From positions 1-32,285 of the forward strand of contig CAXNAD020000073.1 in the NCBI GenBank assembly GCA_964200185.2: DNA of 32,285 nt. Reading direction: 5' to 3'. This DNA is from Choristocarpus tenellus KU-1152. Taxonomy: Eukaryota; Protista; Phaeophyceae. Of the stretch, positions 1 through 20,346 are shown in pieces. The position numbers were made by a program, and so were the translations under genes. The notes beneath the pieces are model-generated. The model saw only the letters and a program-made list of their open reading frames with translations, had not been told where the DNA came from and made no database searches. Every line of letters starts with the position of its first letter. The first letter of the stretch is position 1.

Positions 1-106
1 GTTAGGGTTAGGGTTAGGTTTAGGGTTAACCCTAACCACGTTCAATACAATTGGTAAGGGTTAGGGTTAGGGTTAACCCTAACCCTAACCCTAACCCTAA
101 CCCTAA
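1..106. repeat. Telomeric repeats with two head-to-head (TTAGGG)n-(CCCTAA)n junctions
   Basis: ...TTAGGGTTAACCCTAACC... at ~23-32 and ~70-79. Confidence 0.95.
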
Positions 107-180
107 CATTGTTTGCAACTGCCTCATCAACCTTTCAAATTAATCGCCCCCACAACCTCTGACAGAATATACACAATACT

Positions 181-544
181 GACACAACAATAATGTGTGT
201 TCGACCCGACAAATAATGTGTTTCGACACAACAGCAATGTATTTTAATGCAGCAGTAATGTGTTTTGGCACAACAACAATATGCTTTGACACAACAGTAA
301 TGTGTTTTGACACAACAACAATATGCTTTGATATAACAGTAATGTGTTTTGACACAACAACAATATGCTTTGATATAACAGTAATGTGTTTTGGCACAAG
401 AGCAATGTATTTTGATGCAGCAGTAACGTGTTTTGACACAACAACAATATGCTTTGATGCAACAGTAATGTGTTTTGACACAACAACAATATGCTTTGAT
501 ATAACAGTAATGTGTTTTGACACAACAACAATATGCTTTGACAG
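181..544. repeat. Minisatellite, 42-bp unit made of two diverged 21-bp subunits (GTAATGTGTTTTGACACAACA / ACAATATGCTTTGATATAACA), about 8 units
   Basis: Visible periodicity. It explains the repetitive ORFs in four frames. Confidence 0.95.
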
Positions 545-745
545 GACTCCGCCTTCGGGTAGCGGTATTGTCATCGAGGATAAGGAAGATGCTGACGACG
601 TGAGTGATAATGAAACTGGTTCCCTTATGCCTGGAAATACGAAGCCTCCCTTTCATGGGTCATCTACTGAAGAGGGAAAGGAACGCATGGACGCCTCTTT
701 GAGACCTACACGCCCACGATTGCCCGTCTCTCGCCCTCCAACCAT
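545..745 (+). CDS. CTL-like gene, N-terminal acidic/low-complexity exon (TPPSGSGIVIEDKEDADDVSDNE...RPPT)
   Basis: Acceptor tttgacag at 544 and donor AT|gtaagg at 746. CpG-rich compared with the flanks. The phase-2 end joins exon 3333 to make ATG. The true start may lie upstream of the window or at ATG 216. Confidence 0.55.
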
Positions 746-3700
746 GTAAGGGTTAGGGGATTGAGTACCACCTCGGTTGTGAATATTTTTCAAGTTTTTT
801 TTAATCTCACTTCCTAGGCCTTTTGGGGTTAGGGTTAACCCTATAACCCTAACCCTAACCCTAACCCTAACTTTTATTAGTTCAATTTTTTTAATGAGAT
901 TTTGTTCAATCGGTTGGCTCTAATTACGATGTTCCCATTCTCTCTATATATACTGGTGTTTACTTCTGATATGTCATATGTTGAAAGCCTATGACTTGAA
1001 CTTCAAGTCAGCGTAATGCTTGACCCCTAACCCTTTAGTCACTCACCGGTTGGGGTTAACAAATTGGGGGTTAGGGTTAGGGTTAGGGTTAGGGTTAACA
1101 AATTGGGGGTTAGGGTTAGGCCCTTTTTGCAAGTCCTGATAGAGACCTCAGATTTTTCTAACTCATTGAAGGACACTACAGAAAAGGCCTTACTAGGTGA
1201 TCAGGGTTAGGGTTAAGGTTAGGGTTTGAAAAATTAATTGTCAGTGATTTTTCTTGAAGACTCCCAACCAATCTTGAGTTGTCAAAGTCTCAAGTAAGGA
1301 GTCCTAGGATGGCAAGCAACATAAGTAAGAGGTTGAGAGGGCCAGCCTCAGAGACACCTGCAGACATGGGGAAACCGAAAAACAAGAGGGAGGCTCTGAG
1401 GAAGACCAGGCAAGGTCCTTAACGGCTGCGTCGAGGAAGAAATAGGTTAAGAATATATTAACAGAGATGGTGCTCAAAAGGTTGGCAAACTGGTGCTAAA
1501 GAGCAAATGAAGAAATACAAGAAGTTGGTCAAAGAGAGGTTCTTTCTGAGGGGTAGGCGCGTTTACTGGTGATACACTAGCCCTAATCCTGTACTATCAC
1601 TACCAGTTTGTTATCTACAACCATATGGTCCAAACTGAAGTAGTGGAGGCCATCTACTACTTGGCAGTGTGAGTGGGATGCAACAAAGGTTTTGCTGTGT
1701 TGTAAAAACTTTGAAGGATAAGGGGGAGATTTATTCCGACTCTGTGACTGGGAGGGGGACTGTTCAAGTTAGCTCTAACTCTGACAAGTTAACTCTAACT
1801 CTGACAAGTTAACTCTAACTCTGACAAGTTAACTCTAACTCTGACAAGTTAACTCTAACTCTGACAAGTTAACTCTAACTCTGACAAGTTAACTCTAACT
1901 CTGACAAGTTAACTCTAACTCTGATAAGTTAACTCTAACTCTGATAAGTTAACTCTAACTCTGATGTGTTAACTCTAATAAGAGTTGCAAGGTCCTTAAT
2001 CCACAGCTCGACAAGACAGAATTCTCTACCTTTGGACAGCACTTGTTGGGAAGTAAATGTGAAATTACATTTGGGTTTGGTGACCTGGGTAAAAGACAAA
2101 GCTTGAGGTGACTCTCATTGATGGTTCTGGGTACTGTTCCAAAGTGTCGGGGTGTAATTTGTAAACTGCCCAGCTTTCGGACCATAGAGTTGTTTTGGCA
2201 GCAGTTTGTCGGTTAGGGTTAGGGTTAGGGTTAGGGTTATGGAATGAAAACGGGAGATCGAGTACACAAATTGAACAGTCAATAACGCTGGGGTGGTGTA
2301 GTGACCCTAACTGGGATTTAGGGTTAGGGTTAGGGTTAGGGTTAGGGTTAGGGTGGGTGGAAACCAGCAGACTGTGGGAAGCTGGTCACACATGACAAAC
2401 CAGAGGGAGATGACAGATTTCCTCAACACAAGAGGACAAGTATATTGGAGGGAGACGTACACTCAACCTGGTGAGAGTTCTGGATGAGCTGAAAAATACT
2501 TCAGATTTAGCGAGATCGGTGGGTGCTGTAGAGTTAGGGTTAGGGTTTGTAGATAAGAGTTTGCAGGTGGATTATGAGGTGGAACTCATTGTCTACGATG
2601 GCCAAAGATGGCAACAAGACAACATCGAAGCTGCCGATCACTGGCTATTTTTGTAATAAGAAGTATCAAAAGGTGACCAAGCAAAACTCTGAGTACTCCA
2701 GGAGTTTTTTTGTATCTGAAAATGTTGTCTGCTGCCACCCGAAACGATTTGGTCAGCCAAAAACATTTCCTAGGAGTCCTGTGCACATTAGCATTCCCAT
2801 GGCATACATGTTTTGCATCATGCAGAGTTAAAACCTAGGGTTAGGGTTACAATTGTGTTAATGTGAAAACAAAAAATACCTTGAAAACAGAAACTCTCCC
2901 TTTATACGCATAGATCACCTTACTGCATACTGTAGTGAGTTAAAGGCTACTGTAACTTAGGGTTAGGGTTAGGGAGTCAGCATTTATTTCACGTGAATTT
3001 CATGGGATGAATCCACTTGTAGCATATTTGACAGTGGTTTGAATGCCTCCAGTCTATTGTGTGAATTGAGTATTTGCTCCGAATTGGGCCTAGAGCAACA
3101 CGTATGTTGGGTCTATGTGGAGTTAGGACCTCAAATCAATACCTAATGAGGTCAGGGTTAGGGTTAGGGTTTGCCCTCACCTTTCCAACCGCATTTGTTA
3201 AGAAAAAAAATTGGTGTCTAAGTAATAAAAATTAAAAAATACGGAAAGATATTTCCAATCCTTCGATTATTACTTGCCTCCGATATATGTGTTGGATTAT
3301 ATTGGTACATCAAAGTTTTTTTTTTTCATCAGGCAAGGCCATTTCCCTGCAATGTGGAATATTGGTGATGTGGAAGAAGCAGCAGCCTTAAGGGAAAATG
3401 TTTGCTATGGTGGTTTAAGTACTGAACTTTGGATTGCTCTTGCATCTAACACATCTCATTCGTTTGGTAGGCGTGGGGTTGCAGTTCTGTTGCTATAGGG
3501 CGTTCTGTACAGTGCATGACAGGAAGAGTGAGAGTTGTCCCATCTTAATCTGGTAGGAGTGATGCTGAGGTTTTCCCTGCACTCAGAACAATCAGTTTGT
3601 GGAAGGTTGGTTTGTGCTAGTTCACAATTCTCTCGGATCCTTCTTGGTACAGTATGCTACAGTAAGGCACACAAGTGCTTGAGCTGTGAATGAGTTCATT

Positions 3701-6700
3701 ATTTGTATCGGTTTGACTTGGAACAGACGTTTTCTTGGACTATGAGGTAGGTTTGGCATAAAATGTTCTGAAACACTCCTTACTGTTCACATATTCGTGA
3801 TTCTAGGGTTGGGGTTAGATACTTGTGATCAATGCTAGGTGTGAATAGCAGTTCGTATCTCTCTGTGTTTGTTGTGGCAATGTAGATCCACGAAGACAAT
3901 GTGAAGTGGTTAGGGTTAGGGTTAGGGTTAGGGTTAGGGTTAGGTACTTGTGGTCAATGCTAGGTGTGAATAGCAGTTCATATCTCTCTGTTTTTGTTTT
4001 GGCAATGTAGATCCACAAAGATAATGTGAAGTGGTTAGGGTTAGGGTTAGGGTTAGATTCTTGTAATTGATGCTAGGTGTGAATAGCAGTTCATATCTCT
4101 CTGTTTTTGTTGTGGCAATGTAGATCCACAAAGATAATGTGAAGTGAGACTGCGGTCCACTCCTGCCTCCTTGACTTTGAGAAGATGGTGAGTTCATGTT
4201 CCACTGGTGAAGTCTTGAATGTGTCAACGAGGTCTCCTCCAAGTTTATCCAAGAGGTCAATACATCTAGCCATACAGTTGATGGCAAGTTTCAGTACAAG
4301 GGCCTTTTAGGCAGAGATGCCAATAGTGGGGTCATGTTGTGCCTAGGTAGTACTTTCTGTCATGCGGATGGTGATGAGAAGATTAGGGTTAGAGTTTAGC
4401 CATCAATAGGAAAAAAAAAGAATTGTTGTAAAAAAAAGGTAAAAAAAGGGTTAGGGTTTATCCACGTGTTGTCAGGACCTCTTCCTTTGCTTAGGGTTAG
4501 GGTTCTCCTTTCATACAGTTTGCTACCTATAAGCACATGAGATGAGCTTTTTATTACTGGCTAGTAATTGAATCATGATTGTGGAGGACCCCAAGGTGAT
4601 AATGTTGTTCTGTCTAGCTAACCCTAACCCTAACCCTGACTGGGTAGCTCCGTGGCATAATTGAGCTAGTGTCATCTCCCCAATTTCTCACCCACAGAAA
4701 TGACCAAAAAGTTAATTTGATCCATGTTGCACAGAGGCACCGAATGGGGGCACATGGCCTTGCTCGAGCCTGATACCATCCATGGTACAGATGAGTATCC
4801 CTCGGGGATAATTGGCTTGATATTTACTTCACACCCTAGCAATAGACTTTTTTTTGTGCAGTCTGGCACTCTTTGCCCCTCCGTTTGCACTTGTCTGGCA
4901 CTCTTTGCCCCGTGTTATAAGGACCCTCGTGACATGTTAGAAATAGGTTTGTAGGTAATCAAACCAAGAAAACTGCTTTTGTCATCTACTTGTGATCTAT
5001 TTCCTTCCAGACAAAATGGATGAGGTTAGTTTTTTTTTGTCATTCACTGTCCACGTGGAGGCATGGGGGTACCAACTTCTCCTCATCAGGCCTTCCAAAT
5101 CATGGAAGGCGTGGGTGGTTTGAGCTGTGGTTTCCAAGTATCCGAGGTAGGAGTGTGGCCTGCACTCCATTTTCCCCCTGTATTTGTGTCTCTGGCGAAG
5201 GTGCTTGTTCTTGTTCCTCTGGCTGTCCTCTCTTAGTGACATCCTCTTGTCTATACTTGGTCCCAGCACCTCAGCACGCTATGTTGCAATAATTCTTTTA
5301 TGGCTTATTGATAGAACTACACCTGTGATGAGAATTACATGCACTCAGACACACTTGTTGGGACAATGCTGTTGAGCAACAATTGTTTGAAGTACTCAGT
5401 ACCCTTGTGTTTCACTTACAATGACCATAATGGGCTGCTGCCGAATTTCTATGGTGAGGATGGGGTACTACATGATGCAATGCTGTGATTGAGTAATGGA
5501 GGGGTAGCTCAGCCAGTTAGCACCCACTTTGTTCCATCAGCTCTAGAAAGAAAGGAACAACAATGGAGAAGTTGTGGATGGATAAACATGTGGGGACTGA
5601 CCAAGAGATCTGTCACTAATCAATCACAGTGCTGGAGCAACACCAGGAAGAGAGGTGCAGGGGAGGTCTGTGTGATCTGTGCTGGGTGAGAAGAATGAGA
5701 AGCTCCACCATACAGCAGCCATGAATCTCCAGTGGCACCAGGAGGAATGGCTTGGAGTGGGACTGTGTAAGGGTGGAAAGGGTGGGTGTGCCCGGGCAGG
5801 GTCTGTGCATGCTTGTGCAAAATTTGATCTAGCTAAGTGTATGTGTATAGTCGTGGGGTCTGTGCATCACATTAGACTTGAAAATGTTCAACACTTAGAA
5901 ATTTCGGTATCACAGGTCAGGGCTCTGCCCAGCGGCATAAGAACAAGTAACATTCTGGTACAATCATCACCTCAATTTTTGTTCATAGTATCTGTTGACT
6001 CAAGGTAGAATCAGGGTTAGGGTAACAAAGGGAGGGGGCTTATGACAGTAGTTCCAGAATATCCACTCCTTTTTTTGTAGCAATACCCTACTACTATCTT
6101 TTTGTTGTGGATCGTAGCGCTTGATATTTGATCCTGCTTTTTGCTAATGATTGACACTGACATTTTGTCAACAGTTCTTTTTGTTGAAACATTCACTGTC
6201 TCAGCACCCATGCTTGTATTTCATGTTGAGAGTATAGTTGACAGTTTGTTCTTGTCCTGGCCTTGGAGAAGGTCAATTACTAATAGGGTCAACCATGAAG
6301 TTACAGACCTGTTTGGCATGACTGAGGCATGCATTTGTCAGCATCGATGTCCTGTTTCATAGCATGGTTGATGAAGTGGCAGTGGCAAATAGCTCTCATC
6401 TTGTCAAGACAAGATAGTCCCAGCAACGTTTCTCGAGCTGTGGTGGGTGGCTTGAGCTAAGTTGGCTCCAATTGTGAGCAGTATATTGACTGATAGTGTT
6501 GTTCCACTTAAGAGCTCTTCTTAAGGCCTCTAAGGGTCATGCTCTTTTGATGGGCTGATGTGGTCAACCTCTCTGGGTAGACACTAGTAACACTGCATCT
6601 CGGTTGTAATGATTGGCCTATGATAAGTGAATCATGTTCATCTCGGTTGTAATGATTGGCCTATTATAATCAAATAATGTTCATTTCGGTTGCAATGATT

Positions 6701-9700
6701 GGCCTATTATAATCAAATCATGTTCAGACCTACTTCAAGCAGCAATGCAGTATTACTTCAATTTTTTTGTATTGTAATGGTGCATATAGGGGTTAGGGTT
6801 ACAAAATGTGTCCATTGTGTGGGTACAGGATGGAGTCAGCAAGATGCTGCATAGGCTGACGACCAATGAGAATCTTGCTTTGACCGTGGTGAAGATAATG
6901 AGGTCAATGTCAGATTACTTGGAAGTGACCTGACTTAGAACTATGTATGGGGGATACATTTCAGATGTTTTCGTGATCAATTGGAGCAAGTTGTGAAGGA
7001 ATGTGGTCAACTGATTGGTTCAGACCAGTGGTAGTCAGTGGTACCTATGTGGCATGTGATTGACATGATGCATGGCAGGGAGTAGACATGTTGTGAATTT
7101 CAGATATACTGCATCGCCCAAGGATTTGACTCTGTTTGGAATGGTAGATAATGGATAGTTTTGGTAGATGACAGAAAAAGAAAAAATATGTAGTTCGTGA
7201 CCTCCTACATCGTGCAAAGAGAACATTAATAGGAATTCAGGAGATTGGATGATATGTTGTGTGATGCATAGGGTTTGAGAAGCATAGAAGGTTGCGAGCG
7301 CTGCCCTGCCATGTGAAAGAACCCTAACCCTAACCCTGCCATGTGAAAGAACCTTCATGGGTATTTGGAAGTGTACACTGTAACTTTGGAAGAATGTTGA
7401 GACGAGGAGTGATTTGAGATTTTTGCTGTGCATCGTGTCTTTGATCTATGGTAAAGATGCAGCAGGTCAAAGGTTGATAGCTCCACTTTGTGCGTCAGAA
7501 CTGCAATAGTCAAGTCTTGAGCAGTCAAGTTTGGTGCTACTCTAGTTCATTGATGACAATGAAAGCAAGATCCATACTTTGGCATTTTGGTTGGTTGTGC
7601 CAAAGAGTAATCTGACCAGGGGACTATTTGCTCAAGACACATGGTTGAACCTTGCCCCTATTGTTTGAGCAGGTCCAGAGATGTACGCTACACGGTGCTG
7701 TTCTTGCTTCAGTCAGTGATCACCCTTACTGTTTCCTTCAAGACTGGTAGGTATTAGAGGAAGGGTCTTGAAGTCATATCAAGATTACGTACTAAGATGC
7801 TTAAGTACTACTCAAAGTATTCAGTTCGAGTACTCTAACCCTAACCCTAACCCTAACCCTAACCTCTGGAATAACACGTGCCGCATCTAACAGTGTCTCC
7901 AAACACCTGTTTGCTCTGTTATCGTTTAGTGCTGTCTTGGAGGTCTTTTTTAGCACCCTCTTCACCTTATAATTTCAACATCATCGCACTCTCTTCACAT
8001 GGGGGCCAGGACCAGAGATTGTCGATGTAGTCACTACCCCTTCGTGTGCCTCCTTTCTGTTCATATATATATATAGTTCTGTTAGCCTTGGAAGAGACAC
8101 AAGCCATGGTAAGGACTGACTCTAAGCACCTACAATCGATTTGGGGTTGATGTTACCTCATTGATTTCAAATTTTGTTATTATTTCCCAATATTCATCCG
8201 CAATTCTGGTCTTTCCTTCTCTAGGCAACAACTACAATGTCAACAGCGCAAGTCCTAACGAAGCTCAGTGGATACCCATTCCTGATGGGGTTCGTTGGGG
8301 CAATTGTCTCAACCTGGGGGCTGCCATGGGGTTGTTCCTTTCTTGCATGTTCCAGTGGGTCCTAATGAACACCCGACTCGGTTCCTTCCTGGCGAAAAGG
8401 TCACTGCATGCTGCTGTGGCATTGGAGATCATCTTAAGGTGATAGAGTTGGGGATATATTTTGTGACTGGTTGGACTGTGCGTTACGCTATAGCGCATGC
8501 ATGAATGACAGAGGGTTAGTTTAGGACAAGAGTTAGGGCCTGGTTTGATTTAAGGTCGCTTTAATTTTCATGCCAAACTAGGATTTGTTGGGTTAGCTCT
8601 TCTATGGTTAGTGCTTTGTGTCAATCCTTGGGCTCAGGATGGTAGCTTGCAGCTCTGAGCTATTGGGGAAACAACTTGAGAAGAAATCAGACTTGGGAAA
8701 TTTTATGTATGTGAAGTGTTGAGCGAGTCCGTTCTATCGAACTCACCCCACTTCTCCTGCTCATAAACTGGCGCTCCCACTTCCCCTGCTAGCTTGAATC
8801 CGGTTTCCGTTCTTTCTTTCTCATCCCCATCTCCCTCTTCCACCTGCCCTAACCCTAACCCTAACCCTAACCCTAACCCTAACCCTAACCCTGTGTTTTT
8901 TGCACCGTTGTTGTTAGTGTTGGCATCCTTGCCTTTTCTCGTGTACATTGGCCCTTGGCAGTCGTGCTGGGGGTAATGGCAGTTAATGGTGTTAGATGGG
9001 GAACGCGTTTGAAAGACTCACGGCACTTCCTTGGCATGCTGGTTGACATGGTGAGTAGTAGGGTTAGGGTTGGGACTGACGAGAGCATTTAAGGCCTACC
9101 CTCAGGAGATGCTATTTATTTTTGTGCTAACTTTAGGGTTAGGGTTAGGGTTAGGGTTAGGGTTAGGGTGAGCCGTGATAGTGCTGTGGTTGTATGTAAT
9201 GGGCTGACATTGGGCTGCACCTGTTTGCAGTCTAGTGGTTAGTTGGGACTTAAAATCTGGTTTCACTCAGTGCTAAACTCATGTAACAAATGTGGGCCAT
9301 TTTTTGTTAGTTTTCCTGAGTCGAATATCGCTTAGGGTTAGGGTAAGGAGATTTGATGTGGTTTTTGACTTGGTGAAATATTTGTGAAGTACTTAGTGTT
9401 CTCCTCTAATACGCCACAGCCTCCACAAGAAAAGTGTGCAATCTTTGTTGATGTATGGTTTCACTCCCCTTCAGCGAGATAACCCTAAGAATATAGGGTT
9501 AGGGTTAGGGTTAGGGTTAGGGTTAGTGTTCATCTTTTGCATGTGCTCCGTGATGCACTATCTTCCCCTTTGTCTTTCACAACAGTGTGAGGCTTTCGTT
9601 GAGCAGGGTCCGTGATACACCCTGAAGTGTCTCGCTGCAACTGGTTTGATCAACTGAGATTTCATGTGCATCCCTCTGCCTCCTTTTGAGGTATGCAGTG

Positions 9701-12700
9701 TGCCCACCTGTTGCTGCTGATATCCTGTGACAGCACAGACTGAGTGAGTCAAGGTGTCCTAACTCCACTAAAAACTCCTTCTAAGTCACTAAAGGGATGT
9801 GTAGCCTTTTCTGACCCGTGTGAGGGCTCACACTGTTGTTGTAGCACCATCCATACTTCGTATTTACAACACCCCTGTGTTAGTTTGAGGTCTCAATTGC
9901 TTGGTGGAGAAGGTGCTGGTCTAATCTCCATCCCAGGATGACGCCAACCAGATGCTCTGCTCCCCTCCTGTTCTATATCAACATGTCTTTATAACCTAGC
10001 TGTGAAGAGAACCTGAAACTGTTTGTGAGGAAATGAATTTCAACACATTTCTAAGTGGTACTGTCGCTGATGAACAAGGATAGTGCGAGGTTTACTGCTG
10101 TCACTCTTTATTGCTTCCTTGACCTGTTGTATCCTTGAGTTCTGTTTTATGGTTTGGAACTCCTGATTCACAACTTCTACAGTTTGTTAGAATTGACTAG
10201 GCACCATCGAAAAATATATTTATCCTTTTCACTATTTCATGTTCTAACGAACTATTTCCTTATGCCATACCAGTGTAAAACCAACCGAAATTTGCGACCA
10301 TCTCAATATGATCTGTTTTCAAAAATGAGAGGCATTTTCATTAACCTGACATAATAGCACGGTTGAGAGCAATGATTCCACTCTTGATGCCCATGTGTAG
10401 TCCACATCTAAACCTTAGAATGTACATGGACGTTCTCTAGGTTAGGGTTAGGGTTGACGAGGAGCACAGTAGGGATTTTGTGGTCGCAGTTCTTTTGTTT
10501 GGCACCAAGATAAAACTGTGCTTGGTAGATTGCGATCACCTTGCACACTCATTCCTCTTGTGAAAGATGTTGCACCCTTGACAGGTCTTTGGTTTTCTAC
10601 TGCATTGTGTCGTATCACTTAACGTATCACTTGATGCTCGTGTGAAATCACCATCAAATCTGTTGGCTGTGTTAACTTGATTGAGTTTGAAAGACCCACC
10701 CTCTAAGGTGGGGCCTGTCATGATGAGATGCACACCATCTCATCACATGGCATTCTGGTGGAGTGGTCAGTTCGTAGTGCATAATATTTGTCCATGGAGG
10801 CTTGATTTGGATACTGATGAGCCTCAAAATGTTGCTTTATTGGGCGTGAAGCATCCCAACTTCGAGCTTCCATGAAGGGAAATGTGTGAAATACATATTT
10901 TGAACAGAATAGTGACTCCTGCTCCTGTTGGGCTTTCTACTGGTACCCCTGCTTCAGTTTTTTTTTTTTCTGATTTAGGGTAATATATCGTTAATCCTTG
11001 CTGGTTGGGACCAGACTTTGGAGACTGGTTTGATAGTTGGTAGTACAGAACAGTATGCTGGCCTTTGATATACTGCAACACGATATCCAGGGTGAGTTAT
11101 CACAGTGAGAAGATGAGCCAGGCGTAGCTGTTGCTAGAAGTGGAAGCCACTAGCTGCGATCCTGTCCAGCATCCCCATTTCTATTTTTGGTTCCTGTCTG
11201 GCCTGAACCCTTCCCTCAGACTATAACCACCACCTCTACCCCGCCTTGGTTAAGAGTGACCCTCTAACCCCTGTGTACAAGCCAATGACTTGTGGCCTGC
11301 CCTTCCATATCTGAAATACAGCACTGCTTTCCACAGACCGGTGCAGCAAAATTGCGCAGTTGTTACCCCTACACTCTCAGCATGCTGTATGTCTTTCATT
11401 ATCAGTTCCTCTTCCCTCATACAGTCACTAACCCTACCCTGGTCTCAGTCATGCAAAACTCATTGTGCTCCAAGTTTTGATGGAGGCTTTTACCCTCCTG
11501 CATAAGCCCAGTCAATTCTCTTTGATATCTTCCCTCTAACACTGTCACATTATTGATTTCACCCACATAGGCTCTACTTAGGGTTAGGTTTGGTAGGAGA
11601 CTCAGTCTTTCAATGTATTCATTTTCCACCCAGACCTCCAAGCTCCATCACCAACTCCTCCATCTTCATTTATTGATTGATACGGGTCCCTTGCCTTCCC
11701 CAATCTCAATCCTGGCTATATCATCTTCATTTATTGATTGATGAACATCCGTGGCAGTTGTAGACGTTAAATCTCTCTCAGTGCCTGGAACGCCTCGCAT
11801 GGTAATCTGTGGCTATTGAGGATATCCTTGGCTGGTCTCCTAAGACGTGCTAAACAATACAGACATTGCAAAACATGTCCTCCTCGCAACCTCCCACTTG
11901 TATTGTTGCTCCTTGAATCTCAGGTGTCAGGTGTCAGGTGTCAGACCCTGTCCTGAGATGCTCCTTCGGCAGCAGTGTTGCCTGCCATCCCCCCGTAGAT
12001 GCATGCACCATAGACCTTTCCATTCCTTTCCCACCTGGGTTAATCTATGTTTCGTTCTCCCATGAACACCTTCATCTGTCTTTCCAAGTATATTCAAGTA
12101 TGGTCAAGTCATTGTAGGGTGACCTCATCATCAGGCACAGTACTTATCCTACCCTTTCCCAACGTTTTTGCTCGGATTCATTCCCTGCCAGGTCTTGTGT
12201 GCAAAACTAGATTGACAACCCACATAATGAGAGTGGCAGGTAGCATGTTAATTGAATCAGTACTAGGTGGTTAGGGTTAGGTTTAAACCTAACCCTAACC
12301 CTAACCCGTCCAACCCTTCCGTACTAAGAGTTGCTACCTAGCCAGCTGTTGAGTAAGTCAACAGCTCACCTGAGGTGGGGTTTCTCAATTACTTTCCATG
12401 CTATCAATCTACGCTATTGTGTAGTCCATGAGTTGCGCAGGAGAACTCCCCTGTCCTTAACAACCACCACTGTCATCTTATTTCATTTCTTCAAACAAAG
12501 CTTAGGGTTAGGGTTATTTTTCACACACAGTACAGGGCTAGTGCTAGAGTTTAGTTTTTTTAAATTGTGTGTGTGAGAGAGTGAAAAGTGGTGGGTCTTG
12601 AAAGTTGATGGTTCCCAAGTGCACATTGTGTACTGCTGGTCCATTTAGTTGAGTTCTAGGAAGTTTCCTTCGCCGTTTAAGAATATTTTCGACTCACAAG

Positions 12701-15700
12701 TTAGGGTTAGGATTATAGGGTTAGGTTTTTTTAATGTGTGTGAAAAAGGAAGGAAAAAAACCAGTGGGGTTTCCTAAGACGAAGGGATTTCCCTGTGCGC
12801 TGCAGTCCATTCTGTTCTGCTTGCTGTCCCTAGAACTTGGGAATGTTACACCTAACTCAGTTGCTCCTCTGTTGCTCTGATAAAATTGTGTAGAGAAACC
12901 CAACCTCGGAGTTAATTGTCATCCTGCTTGTAACCCTAAGTTGACCGGTTTAGGAATGAGAAGAATGATCAATGTCTGCTAAATCTTGAGAGTTGTTGAT
13001 GGGTACACTCTGCATGTGACACACTGTTTTTGGAGGTGGTGGAGGTGCTAGGTGAAGTACGGGGGGCTGCTGGAGTACCAATCCTGATCTTGTTGCTCCA
13101 AGTGATGTATCTAATATGGTGGGGGAGGGCACTCTCCTCAAGTTTGACAGGCACTAGCATGAGCTCTGGTTGGGGAGGGTCGGTGCTAGTTCTGATGCTG
13201 TTCAACTTGTACTGGACTTGTCAGGTACGCAATCCCTAACCCTGAATCAAATACGAACAGTTATGTGGGGGTGGTTGAACACTTATCACTCTCTTTTGAA
13301 ATTTGGTGTAAGGAAACACCAGGTATAAGAAATCAATTAATAATATGATAAATGTCCTAACCTCAGAATTTGTGCTTGGGTTGTGTCAGTGTTGGGTTGT
13401 AGTAGTGACTGAAGGTAAAGGACGATAGCTATTTCACAAAAGGAAATGATATCAGCGCTTTTAGATAAGACTTGCTGTAATCTCTTGCAGTTCCTCTTAC
13501 TGCAATGTACTTGACATATCCCTGACTGCGACAATGGTCATGTGGGCAAATCATTTGTTGGTGTGACTAAGCTGCTTCTCTTCACTAACGGCTATCTCTT
13601 GTCTTCTTTGCATGTTCTTCTACTGTTTGTTCTTCTACTGTTTGTGCACTGCATCCCCTCGTGATACCTCTTTCCGGCAGGTGTTTAGAGGTATCATGGT
13701 TGTATTTGTGTCTGGGACAATGTCCTCGTGCTGCACATCAGACAATAGGAAGTCAAAAGGTTCAGGGTTTTCACAAGAACTTGTTGAAGGAAAGGGGTAT
13801 CTCGATGAATATGACGAGTACCTCAATGATGATGTTCTTGTGGGAGAGGGGGGGAGGGATGGAGGCGACACCGATGGCAATCCTCTAGTATCAGGGAGAA
13901 ATGAGTCGCATGACTCTGTTTCAGGATCAGGACGACCAAAGGAGAGGGGTTCATCAAGGGTGAGGACGGTTCCTCCTGTCATTTCCCTCGTTTGTTAGCT
14001 TGACCTTGAAGCCTTGCCCATTTTTGGTGTGTGTGTAAAACTGCCTGTATGTGACCTATCAACAACTTCAATGAACTTTAGGATCCTCTATGGGCCTACT
14101 ACAAATTTGTCTACGATACTTCATCAACCTTAGTGATTCCAATACATCTGGGTGATTCTCAATAGTTCCACACTTGAGTAGTCTGTGGTGGTGCCTCCGC
14201 TGTATAATGAGACTTGACCTGTACCCCGTTTTCTTGTCAGGAAAACACACTAGTGGAAAACACACTAGTGGCAGTCTACCTTCGCATTGCTCTCACTTCC
14301 AGCTTTGGTTCAGCTTGCAAGGGAGCCATCCTATCACCACTTGGCCAGGTAAGCTCGGTCTCGGAGAGGTGTCAAGCATGTACCCTCCTCAAACCTTTTA
14401 ATCCAGCAATGTGGTGGAGTAGAAAATGTAGCCGTTGGCCATGGAAGTAGCTTGCAAACACCGTTGGCTTGGCTTGACAGGTTTGGTTTGGGGTAGTGTA
14501 GTGCATTGATAAGAAAAGAAACCCTTTGAGCAGGAGGTAAGACATTGTTTTTGTGGTTTGTAATGGGTGACCGGCGTGTCCTGCTCATCAATCACTGTTA
14601 AGTCACGCATGCATTCTGTGCAGCAAAATTACCTTTTGACACTGTTTTAATGGTGTTCACTGTTAAGAAGTGGTTCAATGGTCCAAGACGTTTTTCACTG
14701 CCCTATTTTACGGGATGGCACTGAACCAGTTTCGAGATCTCAGACAGCAGTAGGTTGTATTGTTATCGACTGCAATTGAGGGGGGGGGAGGGGGAGGGGG
14801 TGTCACTCTGGACAGTTCAGTTGATTGTAAGCGCACTGCATTGCTATGCACCACCACATAGAGCAGCATTGATTGTTGCTCTGTTTACTCTTTTCCAATG
14901 CTTTTGTTACTTGTGATGAGGTCCCATGTCAAGAACAAGCTGGTATTGACTCAAAGAAGCCAGTCACAACACCATCGAACCGTCCAATCACATCCATTCA
15001 GACCATGAACCGCAGTATATAGTCTCGCTAAGAGCAACCATTTGTTTTTTACTGAAGCTGTGACAAATACAATCTTGCATTGTTTGCATATTTCTTTGTT
15101 CACATGATTGGTAGCTCACCTCCTGCTCAGCTTGATACCTTAGGGTTAGGGTTAGGGTTAGGGTTAGGATTTTTGTTCACATGAGATTGGTAGCTCACCT
15201 CCTGCTTAGCTTGGCAGCTGATGTCCTCGTCTAGCAAATGCAAGTTATCTGCAGTCACACAAACATAGAGCTGTTTATCGTTTAAGAGAGTAAGTGGACG
15301 CTACTTTGACAGAGTACCTCAACAAGAACTATAAATTTCGGCCAAGGCAATAAAACAGTGCTTCTTTTGTTTAAGAGCATGGATCCCCCCTAAGCCATGC
15401 TCCTAGAAGGACAAATTTCGCGCTGCATTTGGTCATTTCTTCCTGCATTTTGTGTAAATGTTACAAATAGTCATTAAGGAAACGCTTGATAATATTATTT
15501 CAATATCAGCTCCTAGGATACTACCATCTTTCTGATTGGAACATTTGTTCAGCACATCCCAATCTTGATGAAAACTCCAAATGTAGAGCTGATTCTAATG
15601 CTAACCCTATCTCCACTAGTGCTTACAATTTTTGTTTTCCTGTATGGACTCTAAATTTCATGCATTTCAATCCCTCCAGCTCAGATCTATGGTGACGTGC

Positions 15701-18700
15701 TTGACTTCAAGGGTGAGGGAGCCTTCTGGTAGGCAAATATCAAGAGGTGGCCGTTGTGTAGATGCCTTTGAGTCGCTGACAAGGGGGTACCACGACTTGG
15801 CGCTCGTTCATGTTGGTGCCTACAGGTATACCAACTTTGTAAGCTTTCCATTTTTCTGAATGCTATCCCCAACAGCACTTTCCTCTCCTGGTGTGGGTTC
15901 CAACTTAGGGTTGGGGTTAGGGTTAGCACGATGGAAGCACTCACAATTCAAACCCTACTGAAGTCCAGGCCATGGCAGGCGTTGAGCAAGTGGCAATAGT
16001 TGAAAGTATATAGTGAGTGCACTAGCAGCGAGGATCAGATGGGGAGAAGTATTACTTAATAGAGGACATCAACTCAAGGACTGTTGGCAATAGTGCATAG
16101 CCAACATATTATTTTTGTGAAGATTGGTTATCAGCCATGTGAATGCACAACTGCCTGTTTAGGAGAGCCTCACATCAACCTGTGGCAGTGGCAACAATCT
16201 AAATAATCTACTGGTAGAATGGATAGTCAGCATAAGGTACCCAGGAGGAAGAGATTGTGGTGTTTTTTCTCATCTTTCCATGTCCCCTCTCAGGTGATTT
16301 TGCCAGTAACAGAATGGGATCAACACACAACCCTAACCCTGATTTCGATAGTTTTCCTGCTGAACTAGTTGTGTACTTAAGTGCTTCTACATACTCAGTA
16401 CTTCAGTTGACAAATTTCAATCCTTGCACATTAGAGTGTTTGCAGACAGATCAATTGGAATGTGCCTGAATATTTGTATTTTCAACCTACTGCATGGAAC
16501 ATGTTGATTTAACTGTAATATGTCTGGCGTTGGATGTCACGATGACAGGAGGATGTACACAAGAGTTTAGTAGGTGCAGTCAGTAGAAACGTAACTGCTT
16601 TTTGTCCAATACTTTTTTTAATTTTTTTCTGAGTGATTGGTATTGGTCACCTCAATGCGGATTTTTTTTTCGCATTATGTTAGAGAGGGAATGCTCGCTG
16701 TTGAGATTGCATGCAAAGTAGACCAGTAGAAAGCATGAAGTCTTGTCTGGCTTTGGGAATTATTTTAGAGTTAGTGGCAACCTCCTGCACAATGGTGACC
16801 TTCCTTGCGTACACGCCTCACTTTAATTTGGACTCAGATTGTGTCACTGACTGAGTTAAAAACACAAAATTGGGCTCCACTGTGGTTGTCAGTGTGTAGG
16901 AACATTCTGAATTTGTTCCCCATCCTTTATAGTTTGTTGGGTTTTTGCTCTGTTGCCCCACACTATCCATTTGTCCAGGTGCATGGTGATCACTGTGGTG
17001 CGGGTTGGGCGGAGGACCGTTGTCTGAGCTGAAGTGTGAAACAAACCCCAACATCAGATCTCATCGTAACAAGTTGGTGTCACTCCCCTCGACTTGTACA
17101 ACAGCTTTATGCCAGCTCTAATTGCCTCATAGTAATGTTTCGATCTTGTCCCATTAGTACCAACTTTGCATTTCGGCGCATTGGTACTAACATATTAATT
17201 TTGCTTGTCCCATTTTGTAATTGCCCCATTTTTTTAATAGTACTGCATATTCCCCTGCTGTGGATGAGGTCTGGAAGCTTCTCCGACAATCTGGACTAGA
17301 GGCGGTGTTTGCAGAAGACCTTGTAGGGCCAGCAATGAACTGGCTCTCAGTATCCATGGCAGTTTTGACAGCTGCAGCTATTGGTGCTGCTCCACATGGC
17401 CATGCTGCAGACAGGTACCAAGTATGCCCTGCCCTGTAAATACGTATCAGGTGGTATTGTGTATGTATTGCTCATTTTGTTTTGTTGCAACTCATTCTAC
17501 TTGTAATAGTTTGCAACTGACAACAGGAAGGTTGTAATAATAATAATACTAATAAAAATAATACTAATCGTCTTCAATGGCTGCGCACCATGTTTGAATG
17601 CTGAATTGACTCTTCATTCATTTTCTGTTACTCTAACTGTTTCCAAGAATCGTTCCCTCTTCCAGTTCTTATCTCTCAGCCGGTTCCTTTCACTGATTTC
17701 CACTGACTAATTGTGACAGTTAATGGAGTGCTTATCTTTGGGGTCGGAAAGACTTGAGTGCATTTTAGGGTGGTTCAGTTCCTGTATCGCAAATATACCC
17801 TACTGTTGTGCTTAGAGGTACTGAGGCTGAGGAGGTAACTCCATCACTCCATCACTGTAAAGTTGAAGTGATACCTTAGTGTTCAAATCGTGGTGGTAGG
17901 TCACTTTTCCCATGTGGTTGCTTGGTACCACGAGAATAATGCACCCCGTATTCCAATCCAACTTAGGGTTACTGTTTTGAGTGAGAGTAAGAATGGTGTC
18001 CAATTCTCCTGTTGGTGTGGTGTTCTTGCGAAGAGGGCATTGCAGTGGAAATGATACACTCAAAGGCAAGAGATAAAACACACTGCACAAGATGAACACA
18101 CGGTGCATGTGATTTGACTCGGCTGTAGAGGAGTAGGGAGAGTTGATGAACAATGTAGTATCTGAATCTGTAATGCATGAGAAGCAATGCCCTGACCTTA
18201 GTGCCAGGTGAATCAAGTTAGAACTACAATTTAGGCTAGTCCAGGCTAACATGAAAATGATGGTATTAGTTTCCCCAGAGAGGTCAAAGTATCTGGGGGG
18301 GGGGTGTCGGCATCCTTTTTTCACCCTTTTTTCGATTTTCACTTTTTTGATGCGATTTGGTCGCACGTGTCGGATTTGAAATGTCAGCAGAAACAGAAGT
18401 TATTTGACTGAAACAGACGCTCCCTCACAAACCACCCCCCCACCCCCTCTCCCAGATACTTTGACCCAGAGGCAATTGGAACAGTTTTTGCAAAATATAC
18501 TCTGGGGAAGATAACATGCTTTGCAAGATTGACATTAGCTGAGCTTCTTGGTATTGTGCCTGTTGTAGAAGGATTAGGTCAGACTGTGCCTGTACATTGT
18601 CGAACACTTTGAAGTATTGACGTAACTTTGATTTGTCCCTGTAAAAGAGAACACTCTATAAAGGAAAGGGTAATAGTCTATACTTGAAAGGGAGAATATT

Positions 18701-20346
18701 CTTAGTCAGAACAGCACACTTTTGCTAAATTTATAGTGAGCAATACAGATATCCCTGCCCTTGTTTCTGTATGTGTTTCATTTTGGGGCTCCTCGACTAT
18801 TTAGTACTTGCCGAACAAAGCTTAACCTGTTGTATGTTGATTCTATATCTGCATCTCTTGGCTACCTGCTGTGTTTGCTTTTGACCTCTGAATGACTGCT
18901 CAGGTTGATATTCTTCACCTTCCTTGTGTTTTACGTGGTTCGCTCCTGTATGCAAACAGGAACAGAGGTATGCACTTTTATCATGATCACATTTACTCTG
19001 AGCACCATTTCGCTGCACCTACAGGACTGTAAAAATTCCTGGAATAAACAGGATCCGCAATCCTGTTGGAGAGTTCTACACATAAATGAAGTTTGTGCTC
19101 CATGGTAGTACAAGTGCAGAGTCATTTGTAGTGCAAAAATCGTAAAACAAGCAAAGAAGATTTTGATTATGTAATCGTTGCGGTATATTCTAACCCGAAC
19201 CCTAACCCTGAATACATCCAGTGACAAATTGTACTATCACAATGCTGAACTTCTATGAATATCCATGGACAGGAATGTTGGTGTGTCCCTGTAAGTGGAT
19301 TTCAATTTACTCCAAACCAAGAATTACTCAGAATGGCCCTAGCTTCAGTATGTTGCTGATATAGCACATGCTCTTTGGTAGTATTACAAACCAAATGTCA
19401 CTTGCGCATGACCCCAGTTCTCACTTCTCTTGTATGATGTAATATTCCCTCCAGGATTTCCTCTTTGTACTGTGGCCCCTTTCACCGATTTGACAGACTG
19501 AACCACAAATATGAGTAGCAAGAGCATAACGGCTGTATCTTGTTTAACTTCCCCTTGGTATCTTGGTCAAAACGTATTTCTTACACATTTACCACTTTTT
19601 TCCGTGCTGTGGATGCCTGGTCAAATCTTTGGTAGTGGGGTCAGTTTGAAGACTGTGGTTGAAGCATCCTCTTCATTGAAATAAAGGATTGGTACTAGGA
19701 CAATTGTAGAAATGGCCAAAGCCTCCTGTAGCAACCAACCTGGAAATGATCATTTTTTCAATTAACTGCCTTCAGTGTGTATAATCCTTGCCTTACCAGG
19801 TGCTAAGGTCTGCTGTTTATGCAGTTTACCTCCAATTTGTGGACAATCCACACAGCTTGGGAGAGGTACGTGACTTGGAAAAATGTAGCATTGCTTGTAG
19901 ATGTGGAGTGTGTATTTTAGAAGTTGCTGGGTTGTGATCTGTGGCATCAAATATAGACTGTGCATTGAGTTGTGATCCAATCTCCAATCAAGGAAAGAAA
20001 GGCAGTATTGGAGATTCACCAATACTTCAGAGATGGTCAAATACCTACAACCCACTGTAGAGTTCTATTTCCAGTACTCCTGAAATACTGCATTGCCAAT
20101 AATGTGTGCAGCCGGGCTTTCTGTATTGGTAGTGACAAGTGCAATATATGTTGTCTTTCCATTTTGCTAAAATTTTGTCAGTGCAGACCCTTTTTATCAT
20201 GTTTCTCGCTTTCTGAACCTCTGTGCTCTCTTCTGTTCTTGCTCTGTGTGACGTCCTATCAGCGGTTCTCCCTTATCTACCACCGCCTTGAGCGTGTTTC
20301 AGAGTTATGGAAATACCAGGATCAACTGTGGGGTGTGCAGGTCTAG
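545..20346 (+). CDS. Choline transporter-like (CTL/SLC44/PNS1 family) multi-pass membrane protein, spliced gene. Exons: 545-745, 3333-3466, 8010-8108 (uncertain), 8225-8438, 8918-9050, 13036-13224, 13681-13959, 14241-14348, 15680-15825, 17241-17414, 18904-18967, 19800-19865, 20263-20346
   Basis: All introns are GT-AG and the phases join without stops (1891 nt = 1 + 630 codons including TAG). The product has family-typical segments in the expected order: LMLFNLYWTCQ|VFRGIMVVFVSG (cf. LFSLYWTSQVIKNVVHVTVAG), RIALTSSFGSACKGAIL (cf. RAxTxSFGSICFGSL), FESLTRGYHDLALVHVGAYSTAYSPAVDEVWKLLRQSGLEAVFAEDLVG (cf. FNxYAxxxVAIYGxSFxxAAxxxWxLxxxxGxxAxINDDL) and VLRSAVYAVYLQFVDNP. Family assignment is by motif recognition, not a database search. 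Confidence 0.85.
1295..1720 (+). mobile_element. Highly decayed RTE-type LINE reverse-transcriptase C-terminal fragments
   Basis: Broken translations LGWQAT*VRG*EGQPQRHL...GRPGKVLNGCVEEEI...WQTGAK and MVQTEVVEAI loosely resemble RTE motifs (LRWAGHVVRM..RLPKR, GRP.K.W.DCV..D, M.KAEVVEALLYG). Confidence 0.3.
1765..1978. repeat. 20-bp tandem repeat (CAAGTTAACTCTAACTCTGA), about 10.5 copies
   Basis: Near-perfect 20-nt period. Confidence 0.97.
3333..3466 (+). CDS. CTL-like gene exon (QGHFPAMWNIGDVEEAAALRENVCYGGLSTELWIALASNTSHSF)
   Basis: Poly-T tract plus catcag acceptor, donor G|gtaggc. Phase 2 in and phase 1 out, compatible with neighbouring exons. Confidence 0.6.
3804..4146. repeat. Three ~90-bp direct repeats, each preceded by a TTAGGG tract of different length
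   Basis: Copies at ~3819-3907, 3943-4032 and 4057-4146 share ...ATGCTAGGTGTGAATAGCAGTTC...GGCAATGTAGATCCAC...AATGTGAAGTG. Confidence 0.95.
5620..5820 (-). mobile_element. Decayed Ty1/copia LTR retrotransposon fragment (aspartic protease active-site region)
   Basis: DSWLLYGGASHS resembles the copia WxLDSGASxH motif. The surrounding ~5-6.6 kb region is CpG-stripped and riddled with stops. Confidence 0.4.
6596..6726. repeat. 43-bp tandem repeat x3 (CATCTCGGTTGTAATGATTGGCCTAT...)
   Basis: Units start at 6596, 6639 and 6682. Confidence 0.92.
8010..8108 (+). CDS. Candidate CTL-like exon (putative first TM segment), contains (AT)6
   Basis: ccag acceptor, strong gtaagg donor at 8109, symmetric phase 1-1 and open as PEIVDVVTTPSCASFLFIYIYSSVSLGRDTSH. 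The reading frame is ambiguous (see findings). Confidence 0.4.
8225..8438 (+). CDS. CTL-like exon, TM segments (…CLNLGAAMGLFLSCMFQWVLMNTRLGSFLAKRSLHAAVALEIIL)
   Basis: Pyrimidine tract plus ctag acceptor, AG|gtgata donor, hydrophobic helices. Confidence 0.75.
8918..9050 (+). CDS. CTL-like exon (VGILAFSRVHWPLAVVLGVMAVNGVRWGTRLKDSRHFLGMLVDM)
   Basis: ttgttag acceptor and canonical gtgagt donor. Phase 2 in and phase 0 out. It is not in the ORF track. Confidence 0.8.
9560..10030 (-). mobile_element. Possible decayed copia gag remnant
   Basis: EVWMVLQQQCEP resembles the gag EAWxxLxxxYEP motif. This is weak evidence. Confidence 0.22.
13036..13224 (+). CDS. CTL-like exon (VVEVLGEV...ILLLQVMYLIWWG...VLVLMLFNLYWTCQ)
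   Basis: Two TM helices and the conserved YWTxQ motif. Donor CAG|gtacgc. The acceptor is a less common GAG. Confidence 0.85.
13681..13959 (+). CDS. CTL-like exon (VFRGIMVVFVSGTMSSCC + long acidic/Gly-rich loop)
   Basis: ctctttccggcag acceptor and AGG|gtgagg donor. It continues the YWTxQ-V motif. Confidence 0.85.
14241..14348 (+). CDS. CTL-like exon (ENTLVENTLVAVYLRIALTSSFGSACKGAILSPLGQ)
   Basis: ttttcttgtcag acceptor, CAG|gtaagc donor and the SFGS motif. Confidence 0.88.
15680..15825 (+). CDS. CTL-like exon (LRSMVTCL...VDAFESLTRGYHDLALVHVGAY)
   Basis: ccctccag acceptor and AG|gtatac donor. Phase 0 in and phase 2 out. Confidence 0.82.
17185..17191 (+). promoter_or_regulatory. Canonical branch-point sequence TACTAAC
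   Basis: Exact TACTAAC about 50 nt upstream of the 17240 acceptor. Confidence 0.6.
17241..17414 (+). CDS. CTL-like exon (TAYSPAVDEVWKLLRQSGLEAVFAEDLVGPAMNWLSVSMAVLTAAAIG...)
   Basis: TACTAAC branch point at ~17185, T-tract plus aatag acceptor, AG|gtacca donor. Confidence 0.88.
18282..18466. mobile_element. MITE-like element (185 bp) with terminal inverted repeats GGTCAAAGTATCTGGG...CCCAGATACTTTGACC
   Basis: Perfect 16-bp TIRs continued inward by G/C runs. Flanks CAGAGA/CAGAGG are a possible 6-bp TSD with one mismatch. A related TIR occurs at 32209. Confidence 0.75.
18904..18967 (+). CDS. CTL-like exon (LIFFTFLVFYVVRSCMQTGTE)
   Basis: ctcag acceptor, GAG|gtatgc donor, TM helix and compatible phases. 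Confidence 0.78.
19800..19865 (+). CDS. CTL-like exon (VLRSAVYAVYLQFVDNPHSLGE)
   Basis: ccttgccttaccag acceptor and GAG|gtacgt donor. It resembles the family's VxxAVxTxxVCFAEDP segment. Confidence 0.82.
20263..20346 (+). CDS. CTL-like terminal exon (RFSLIYHRLERVSELWKYQDQLWGVQV*)
   Basis: Long pyrimidine tract plus atcag acceptor, phase 0, ends in TAG. Confidence 0.75.
   Translation, partial: RFSLIYHRLERVSELWKYQDQLWGVQV

What the first reader, a model, noticed from the sequence alone, without database searches (positions are those of the whole stretch)
1..19209. Genome peppered with telomeric insertions: candidate telomerase-mediated break-repair system
Seen: about 35 separate short TTAGGG/CCCTAA tracts in 19 kb, in both orientations and of varying purity (perfect to decayed, e.g. 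TTAGGT, TTGGGG, TCAGGG). They interrupt unrelated sequences and are absent from all 13 reconstructed exons. Established: short interstitial telomeric sequences arise when telomerase acts at double-strand breaks, but they are normally rare. Inference: in this organism telomerase addition is a frequent or default step in break repair, active over a long period and filtered by selection in exons. An alternative is programmed fragmentation and rejoining.
Basis: partly seen in the sequence, partly recalled or inferred. Interest (0 to 1): 0.85.

Follow-up and report, generated by a model that had tools for sequence, protein, structure and literature searches.

The report
Brown-alga gene introns peppered with telomere repeats
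The introns of one brown-alga gene, and of the matching gene in a related alga, hold dozens of short, real copies of the chromosome-end repeat, which look like marks of telomerase-type repair of DNA breaks at a density far above any animal genome described.

Summary
The window is a whole 32,285-bp contig of Choristocarpus tenellus. It holds 48 TTAGGG/CCCTAA tracts of 12-56 nt, 45 of them in 1-19211, against 0.14 expected by chance. Contigs built from three public runs cross the short tracts without a mismatch. More than 100 other contigs per run share a tract but have unrelated flanks.

The tracts lie in introns of one colinear, spliced choline-transporter-like gene and in none of its 12 exons. 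The orthologous Discosporangium gene has 71 tracts in 22 kb.

Several signatures fit synthesis onto 3' ends followed by end joining:
- abutting or nearly abutting opposite tracts are head-to-head only (6:0);
- some tracts sit between flank duplications of variable length;
- tract junctions are in register with the flanks;
- the variant TCAGGG occurs only as the first unit (12:0:0).

A transposon terminus, a subtelomeric patchwork, ordinary microsatellites and assembly error are rejected.

Telomerase itself is not shown. No empty site was found. Individual tracts look young (1.5% mismatch).

This is the known break-site insertion of telomere repeats at extreme density, so I class it a new variant of a known kind. 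The scan had already noted it on other pieces of this genome.

The parts
1..108 (.). Contig-end block with two head-to-head telomeric junctions (1-38 and 53-108), each centred on GGGTTAACCC
   Evidence: not covered by the read check
543..745 (+). Unannotated upstream coding exon, conserved with L001 5397-5612; its donor GT is at 746
746..758 (+). G-strand tract that starts at the first base of the intron, so the donor GTAAGG is part of it
823..872 (.). Head-to-head junction: G tract 823-838 followed by C tract 843-872
1023..1228 (.). Tracts 1023-1034 (C), 1067-1098 (G), 1106-1121 (G) and 1201-1228 (G, first unit TCAGGG). A 16-nt flank copy at 1055-1070 and 1094-1109 brackets the second tract
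2210..3173 (+). Six G-strand tracts: 2210-2242, 2317-2355, 2529-2549, 2835-2850, 2956-2975 and 3150-3173 (the last starts with TCAGGG)
3804..4146 (+). Array of three ~86-nt units (3821-3906, 3946-4031, 4060-4144), each preceded by a tract of different length (15, 39 and 26 nt); no tract follows the last unit
4381..4640 (.). Tracts 4381-4396, 4446-4459 and 4489-4505 (G) and 4617-4640 (C; its G strand starts with TCAGGG)
6011..6802 (+). G tracts 6011-6025 (starts with TCAGGG) and 6789-6802
7304..7353 (-). Ten inserted telomeric bases (7324-7333) between two perfect 20-nt copies of the flank (7304-7323 and 7334-7353); both junctions are in register with the repeat
   Evidence: bridged by a 0-mismatch contig 7000-7822
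7641..20346 (+). Choline-transporter-like gene (P0001, 520 aa). Exons: 7641-7746, 8225-8438, 8918-9050, 13036-13224, 13681-13959, 14241-14348, 15680-15825, 17241-17414, 18904-18967, 19800-19865, 20263-20346. All are free of tracts
   Evidence: splice joints seen in the RNA-like run X3; weak colinear PF04515 hits
7832..7865 (-). C-strand tract in intron 1
   Evidence: the intron is spliced out in X3
8846..8893 (-). (CCCTAA)8, the longest single tract; it ends 24 nt before the acceptor of exon 3
9058..12728 (.). Intron 3 tracts: 9058-9074 (7 nt after the donor), 9132-9172, 9330-9348, 9493-9530, 10439-10456, 11577-11591, 12500-12517 and 12699-12728 (G); 11428-11439 (C, weak)
12268..12308 (.). Head-to-head junction inside intron 3
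   Evidence: two contigs overlap across it
13232..13245 (-). C-strand tract 7 nt after the donor of intron 4; its G strand starts with TCAGGG
15095..15213 (+). Tract 15139-15171 between two ~40-nt copies of the flank (15095-15134 and 15172-15213, 93% alike)
15905..16342 (.). Intron 7 tracts: 15905-15927 (G) and 16328-16342 (C; G strand starts with TCAGGG)
19190..19211 (-). Intron 9 tract; its G strand starts with TCAGGG
23258..30793 (+). The only tracts downstream of the gene: 23258-23269 (weak), 27628-27642 and 30780-30793

Best explanation
Each tract is a scar of break repair. A free 3' end inside the chromosome was extended with telomere repeats by a polymerase copying a fixed RNA template, most likely telomerase, and the extended end was then rejoined to the other side by end joining. 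Extension of the left end alone gives TTAGGG on the + strand. Extension of the right end alone gives CCCTAA. Extension of both gives a head-to-head junction. A staggered break filled in on both sides gives a flank duplication of arbitrary length around the tract. In Choristocarpus and Discosporangium this happens, or is tolerated, at least 100 times more densely than in any genome I found described. Survivors accumulate in introns; in exons only in-frame ones survive. Shown here: the tracts are real, internal, motif-specific, polar, independent of any repeat family, and shared by two genera. Inferred: the enzyme, the break, and the order of events.
For: Reality. Zero-mismatch contigs from three runs bridge all tracts under 31 nt, and contigs break only at longer tracts.
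Independence of sites. With tracts masked, no flank family is shared in the window. More than 100 other contigs per run carry the same 18-20 nt tract, and their flanks show no consensus (agreement 0.35-0.44).
Motif specificity. There are 38 telomeric hexamer arrays against 9 for the next unit, which is part of a 20-bp satellite.
Polarity. TCAGGG occurs 12 times as the first unit and never as an internal or last unit. T at position -2 of A-phase starts occurs in 18 of 27 cases (P=1.6e-4). The 3' ends fall in all six phases.
Junction orientation. Six opposite-orientation pairs that abut or lie within 12 nt are all head-to-head and none tail-to-tail, as expected if only 3' ends are extended.
Flank duplications of 16 to ~90 nt surround 5 of 43 loci in the window and more than 10 of 62 loci in L001. 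The variable length argues against a transposase or integrase.
Register. At the duplication loci the native flank ends in register with the repeat: GGG at 7323, a G run at 1070, GG at 3906.
Precedent. Duplications, register and head-to-head forms are all reported for break-site insertions in horse and human.
The orthologous gene of Discosporangium carries 71 tracts with the same features.
Against: No empty (pre-insertion) allele or paralogue was found, so insertion is inferred from anatomy. No indel polymorphism was seen among the three runs. No sequence derived from telomerase RNA outside the template was found, and the brown-alga telomerase RNA is unknown. Density differs about tenfold between the gene body and the flanking DNA and declines along the gene, which random breakage does not predict. 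Tracts are enriched next to splice donors (8 seen, 2.4 expected). About a third of native near-telomeric hexamers in these loci carry a tract, which could also fit seeded expansion.
Confidence: 0.62

Rival explanations
1. Seeded microsatellite growth. Chance telomere-like hexamers expand by replication slippage and unequal exchange, without telomerase.
For: Tracts sit in local tandem arrays of tract plus flank (window 3804-4146; L001 9344/9403 and 11017-11202). Tract length differs between array units. Many tracts begin with a 5-of-6 unit that could be a native seed.
Against: Only this one hexamer behaves so. Slippage has no polarity, yet TCAGGG is first-unit only. Slippage explains neither head-to-head junctions nor a 10-nt insert between perfect 20-nt flank copies.
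Confidence: 0.1
2. Insertion of cDNA. Telomere-repeat RNA (TERRA-like), or telomerase RNA copied by a retroelement reverse transcriptase, is captured at breaks or nicks.
For: A polar start and variable flank duplications also fit target-primed reverse transcription. Telomerase-RNA-derived inserts are known in mouse and horse.
Against: No subtelomeric or other RNA-derived sequence accompanies any tract. No reverse-transcriptase ORF was found in either locus. Head-to-head pairs need two primed ends.
Confidence: 0.08
3. The tracts are kept, or even expanded, because they work as intron signals: G-rich elements after donors, and CUAAC-rich pyrimidine tracts before acceptors. This would explain their distribution rather than their origin.
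For: Eight of 22 donors have a tract starting within 30 nt, against 2.4 expected (P=0.004). Two donors lie in the tract itself (window 746; L001 14863). One of the longest tracts in each locus is (CCCTAA)8 just upstream of an acceptor. Tracts are very pure.
Against: Both orientations occur next to donors. There is no enrichment before acceptors (2 seen, 2.4 expected). The test of relative position by orientation is not significant (P=0.076). Most tracts lie deep in introns.
Confidence: 0.1
4. Termini or footprints of one mobile-element family, or a subtelomeric patchwork of fossil chromosome ends.
For: The contig starts with telomeric repeats and satellites, and density falls with distance from that end. 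Ectocarpus subtelomeric satellites contain TTAGGG motifs. Another reader noted a telomeric repeat in a MITE end.
Against: No shared flanks appear in the window or among more than 100 other contigs. Flank duplications vary from 16 to ~90 nt. The tract-bearing DNA consists of the introns of a single-copy, colinear, spliced gene with flat DNA depth. Both orientations occur. The orthologous gene in another genus shows the same pattern.
Confidence: 0.03
5. Assembly or sequencing artefact.
For: Contig-end palindromes at 1-108 were not covered by the read check.
Against: Contigs from three separate runs agree base for base across 13 tract loci. An independent assembly of another species shows the same pattern.
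Confidence: 0.01

Closest known systems
Short interstitial telomeric sequences inserted at double-strand breaks in primates, rodents and horse (Nergadze and colleagues; Santagostino et al. 2020, PMC7215372)
   Same: Short exact (TTAGGG)n tracts at unrelated internal sites. None of the human loci is exonic. Direct flank duplications occur at a minority of loci, flank nucleotides are in register with the repeat, and head-to-head forms occur occasionally.
   Different: Density. By the paper's criterion of at least 4 units, this contig has about 560 per Mb and the Discosporangium locus about 760 per Mb, against about 0.07 per Mb in human and 0.06 in horse (those two figures use genome sizes from my own knowledge). 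Here no empty orthologous site is available. The tracts cluster in one gene body, and a first-unit TCAGGG variant is seen.
Caenorhabditis elegans interstitial telomere sequences (Frenk et al. 2019, PMC6800518)
   Same: A genome-wide population of internal telomere-repeat sites, mostly in introns (63%), nearly absent from coding exons, of uncertain origin.
   Different: About 1,260 sites in roughly 100 Mb (genome size from my own knowledge), or about 13 per Mb, against 1,500-3,200 per Mb here. The nematode sites are longer composites of degenerate and perfect repeats; these are short and 98.5% pure.
De novo telomere addition (chromosome healing) at internal breaks
   Same: Extension of a non-telomeric 3' end that has short complementarity to the template. 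The polarity of the product fits (established knowledge).
   Different: Healing ends the chromosome. Here the extended end was rejoined, so the gene stays colinear.
Ectocarpus subtelomeric ~98-bp satellite containing TTAGGG motifs (bioRxiv 10.1101/2024.05.11.593484)
   Same: A brown alga with a TTAGGG telomere and telomere motifs embedded in a tandem unit. The array at 3804-4146 looks similar.
   Different: That satellite is described as almost exclusive to subtelomeres. Here the tracts are scattered in gene introns, and the array units are not shared with other loci.

Membership tests
Short interstitial telomeric sequence (break-site insertion class) | Short exact telomeric tract at an internal site between unrelated unique sequences | tested here: met
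Short interstitial telomeric sequence (break-site insertion class) | Insertion shown by an orthologous or allelic empty site | not testable with these tools
   No indel among the three runs. Introns of the only retrievable orthologue are too diverged to align.
Short interstitial telomeric sequence (break-site insertion class) | End-joining marks at the junctions: flank duplication or deletion, and nucleotides in register | tested here: met
   Five of 43 loci have adjacent flank duplications of 16 to ~90 nt, with junctions in register.
Short interstitial telomeric sequence (break-site insertion class) | Trace of telomerase itself, such as sequence copied from telomerase RNA outside the template | tested here: inconclusive
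   The first-unit-only TCAGGG (12:0:0) could reflect the template's alignment region, but native TCAGGG is also common and the RNA is unknown.
Subtelomeric interstitial repeats at duplicon boundaries | Degenerate tracts, one orientation, separating blocks shared with other chromosome ends | tested here: not met
   Tracts are pure, in both orientations, and inside introns of a single-copy colinear gene with flat depth.
Mobile-element terminus or tail | Shared element sequence next to the repeat and a fixed target duplication length | tested here: not met
Ordinary microsatellite | Many motifs affected; no strand polarity | tested here: not met
Chromosome-fusion telomeric site | Long head-to-head arrays flanked by subtelomeric DNA of two chromosomes | tested here: not met
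   Head-to-head junctions are 38-56 nt. One (12268-12308) lies inside intron 3 of the annotated gene and another (823-872) lies between the upstream exon and the first annotated exon.

The most novel reading that the evidence does not exclude
In this early brown-alga lineage, telomerase is no longer kept away from internal 3' ends and acts mainly in transcribed gene bodies. That would explain the tenfold excess inside the gene, the decline from 5' to 3', and the excess next to splice donors. Some tracts have since been taken over as splice signals. The first-unit TCAGGG would reveal that the still unknown telomerase RNA reads CCCUGA in its alignment region.
Probability: 0.18. Interest if true: 0.8.

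Novelty: new variant of a known kind. Interest (0 to 1): 0.6.

Why it matters
If telomerase-type extension of internal breaks is this common in a multicellular lineage, these algae are a natural system for two questions. One is what normally keeps telomerase off broken DNA (Pif1-type inhibition, choice of end-joining pathway). The other is how genomes tolerate thousands of internal telomere seeds. The tracts make up about 5% of this gene's DNA, so they also contribute to intron growth and local tandem duplication, and a few reach coding sequence as Gly-Leu repeats. The polar first unit offers a handle for finding the unknown brown-alga telomerase RNA.

Tried and rejected
Orthologues outside the two genera, for a contrast with Ectocarpus-type brown algae. 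Three protein searches (whole protein, two-sequence profile, conserved C-terminal region) returned only the Choristocarpus and Discosporangium proteins. I therefore could not test whether the trait is lineage-specific.

Other hits. The two other hits of the exhaustive search are unnamed ENA proteins and were of no use.

Pfam on 40 ORFs of the tract-poor and tract-rich flanks gave no transposon or other domain, so the cause of the density difference is unknown.

Rfam found nothing in either locus.

Literature. I found no paper on interstitial telomere repeats in brown algae and no brown-alga telomerase RNA.

Exact spliced model of P0004 on L001. The script found none, so the L001 exon limits are approximate, from tblastn and splice-site context.

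Orientation by position in the intron (TTAGGG early, CCCTAA late). There is a trend only (P=0.076).

Inverted-repeat scan. It found only tract-to-tract pairs and no element-like structure.

I sent no joined exon model to any search tool. The full-length protein used is the public annotation returned. Exon pieces were joined only inside one script, to confirm that they reproduce that annotation.
Full report
What the window is. The window is the whole contig CAXNAD020000073.1 (32,285 bp) of Choristocarpus tenellus, assembly GCA_964200185.2. Its only annotated gene encodes P0001, a 520-aa choline-transporter-like protein (PF04515). The gene has 11 exons on the + strand between 7641 and 20346 (weak colinear Pfam hits on single exons). 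One more coding exon lies at 543-745. It is unannotated but conserved with the sister genus, including its donor site. The gene therefore probably starts at or beyond the left contig end.

The observation. Ninety 12-mers lie within one mismatch of (TTAGGG)2, against 0.14 expected. They merge into 48 tracts of 12-56 nt in 44 loci. Forty-five tracts lie in 1-19211 and three beyond. Thirty-five read TTAGGG on the + strand and 13 read CCCTAA. Telomeric DNA is 5.4% of the first 19.2 kb. No other hexamer behaves this way: 38 telomeric arrays against 9 for the next unit, which is part of a 20-bp satellite.

Are the tracts real? Three public runs of one study hold the contig. X1 and X2 behave as DNA, with flat depth of about 15 and about 7. 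X3 behaves as RNA: exon depth is about 300 and GT..AG joints run 7745>8224 and 8436>8916. On 7000-12999, contigs with no mismatch bridge every tract shorter than the 31-nt assembly word. These include the insertion with its 20-nt flank copies at 7304-7353 and, by two overlapping contigs, the head-to-head junction at 12268-12308. Contigs stop only at the four tracts longer than 31 nt. The runs may come from the strain that was assembled, so this is support from independent data, not from an independent individual. The first 6 kb were not checked with reads.

What the tracts are not. With tracts masked, self-comparison of the window finds only local tandem copies and no family shared between tract loci. 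In each run more than 100 other contigs (the counter stops at 128) carry the same 18-20 nt tract. This rules out a single mobile-element terminus and shows the tracts are spread through the genome. A subtelomeric patchwork is ruled out for 7.6-20.3 kb, because there the tracts separate the colinear exons of a single-copy spliced gene.

Signatures of origin.
1. Polarity. The variant unit TCAGGG occurs 12 times as the first unit of a tract (window plus L001), never inside a tract and never at its end. Among the 27 tracts that start at AGGG, T stands two bases upstream in 18 (P=1.6e-4) and TC in 12 (P=1.3e-6). The 3' ends fall in all six phases. A templated polymerase with a defined start fits this. 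Captured telomere fragments or slippage do not.
2. Junction orientation. Opposite tracts that abut or lie within 12 nt are always head-to-head: four in the window and two in L001, none tail-to-tail. This is expected if only 3' ends can be extended.
3. Flank duplications. Five of 43 loci in the window lie between direct copies of the flank, of 16, 20, ~40 and ~86 nt. More than ten of 62 loci in L001 do as well. The variable length speaks against a transposase.
4. Register. At these loci the native flank ends in register with the repeat, and at 7333/7334 and 1093/1094 the far junction is in register too.

Duplications, register and head-to-head forms are described for break-site telomeric insertions in horse and human. 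A caution on TCAGGG: native copies are common in these loci (31). Part of its excess may therefore reflect use of native near-telomeric seeds. Either reading would fit a telomerase RNA whose alignment region reads CCCUGA, which is my inference and untested.

Sister genus. The only detectable homologue is P0004 of Discosporangium mesarthrocarpum, at 50% identity. Its locus L001 (22,288 bp) holds 71 tracts, or 3.2 per kb, in both orientations, with first-unit TCAGGG and arrays of tract plus flank. P0001 maps to 11 exons in L001. Three of them lie upstream of the annotated start, so P0004 is a truncated model and intron positions are conserved. NCBI places the two species in different families. 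To my knowledge they form the earliest-diverging brown-alga order. The propensity is thus shared across an old split. The individual tracts look young: 14 mismatches in 955 core bases, 34 of 48 cores perfect, and few decayed remnants.

Distribution. Between the first and last coding exon, density is 2.07 per kb in the window against 0.25-0.56 outside. In L001 it is 5.45 against 0.75 (P=5e-6 to 5e-4, and 7e-11). The 5' introns are denser than the 3' introns: 3.0 against 0.7 per kb in the window (P=0.001), and 6.7 against 3.3 in L001 (P=0.10). Eight of 22 donors have a tract starting within 30 nt, against 2.4 expected (P=0.004). Two donors lie in the tract itself. One of the longest tracts of each locus is (CCCTAA)8 ending 8-24 nt before an acceptor. 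These are two orthologous loci only. The nature of the tract-poor flanks is unknown, and other readers noted strong variation between contigs. Exon avoidance in the window is weak on its own (3.7 expected, 0 seen, P=0.026). In L001 two coding exons carry in-frame tracts that read Gly-Leu repeats, one of them without any length change relative to Choristocarpus.

Comparison with the known. By the published criterion of at least 4 units, the two loci have about 560 and 760 sites per Mb, against about 0.07 in human and 0.06 in horse (genome sizes are from my own knowledge). Counting all tracts gives 1,500-3,200 per Mb, against about 13 per Mb for the intron-enriched sites of C. elegans. Ectocarpus has a TTAGGG telomere and a subtelomeric satellite with telomere motifs. 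I found no paper on interstitial telomere repeats in brown algae.

Earlier notes of this scan. Other windows of this genome were already reported with the same peppering, and two follow-ups reached the same general reading. New here are the read-level check of this contig, the flank-consensus test across more than 100 other copies, the sister-genus locus, the first-unit and head-to-head statistics, and the gene-body and donor-site distribution.

Verdict. Break-site extension by a telomerase-type enzyme followed by rejoining is the best-supported mechanism (0.62). The enzyme, the breaks and the reason for the extreme density remain inferred.

Noticed in passing
L001:5526-5544 and L001:9935-9952: Telomeric tracts lie inside conserved coding exons of the Discosporangium gene, in frame as Gly-Leu repeats. 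The second replaces six codons with no length change relative to the Choristocarpus exon (window 8918-9050).
   Followed up: partly
window 543-745; L001 5397-5612, 6565-6690, 8339-8518, 9875-10030: Both public gene models look 5'-truncated. A conserved upstream exon is unannotated in both species, and P0004 lacks three further exons that P0001 maps to.
   Followed up: partly
window 8846-8893; L001:13238-13289: One of the longest tracts in each locus is (CCCTAA)8 ending 24 and 8 nt before an acceptor, in different introns. The unit contains the branch-point-like CUAAC.
   Followed up: partly
window 746, 9058, 13232; L001 about 8523, 10049, 11909, 14863, 15690: Tracts start within 30 nt of 8 of 22 splice donors (2.4 expected). 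At window 746 and L001 14863 the donor GT is part of the tract.
   Followed up: partly
window 214-541, 1765-1978, 6596-6726: Three tandem arrays without telomeric units, of 42 bp x 7.8, 20 bp x 10.7 and 43 bp x 3. The 42-bp array is open in the same frame as the upstream exon (ORF 183-746).
   Followed up: no
window 29204-30076: A 291-codon open frame on the + strand with no Pfam match and no annotation, in the tract-poor part of the contig.
   Followed up: no
window 9178-12995: The RNA-like run X3 also covers intron 3 at about a tenth of exon depth (23-58 against ~300). This could be unspliced transcript or DNA carry-over.
   Followed up: no
window 8940: One contig of run X2 reads T where the window has C, inside exon 3.
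   Followed up: no
window 14-25, 12276-12290; L001:10144-10182: A recurrent variant with an extra T and one G fewer (GGTTTAGG) occurs in tracts of both species, in L001 as a short array of its own.
   Followed up: no
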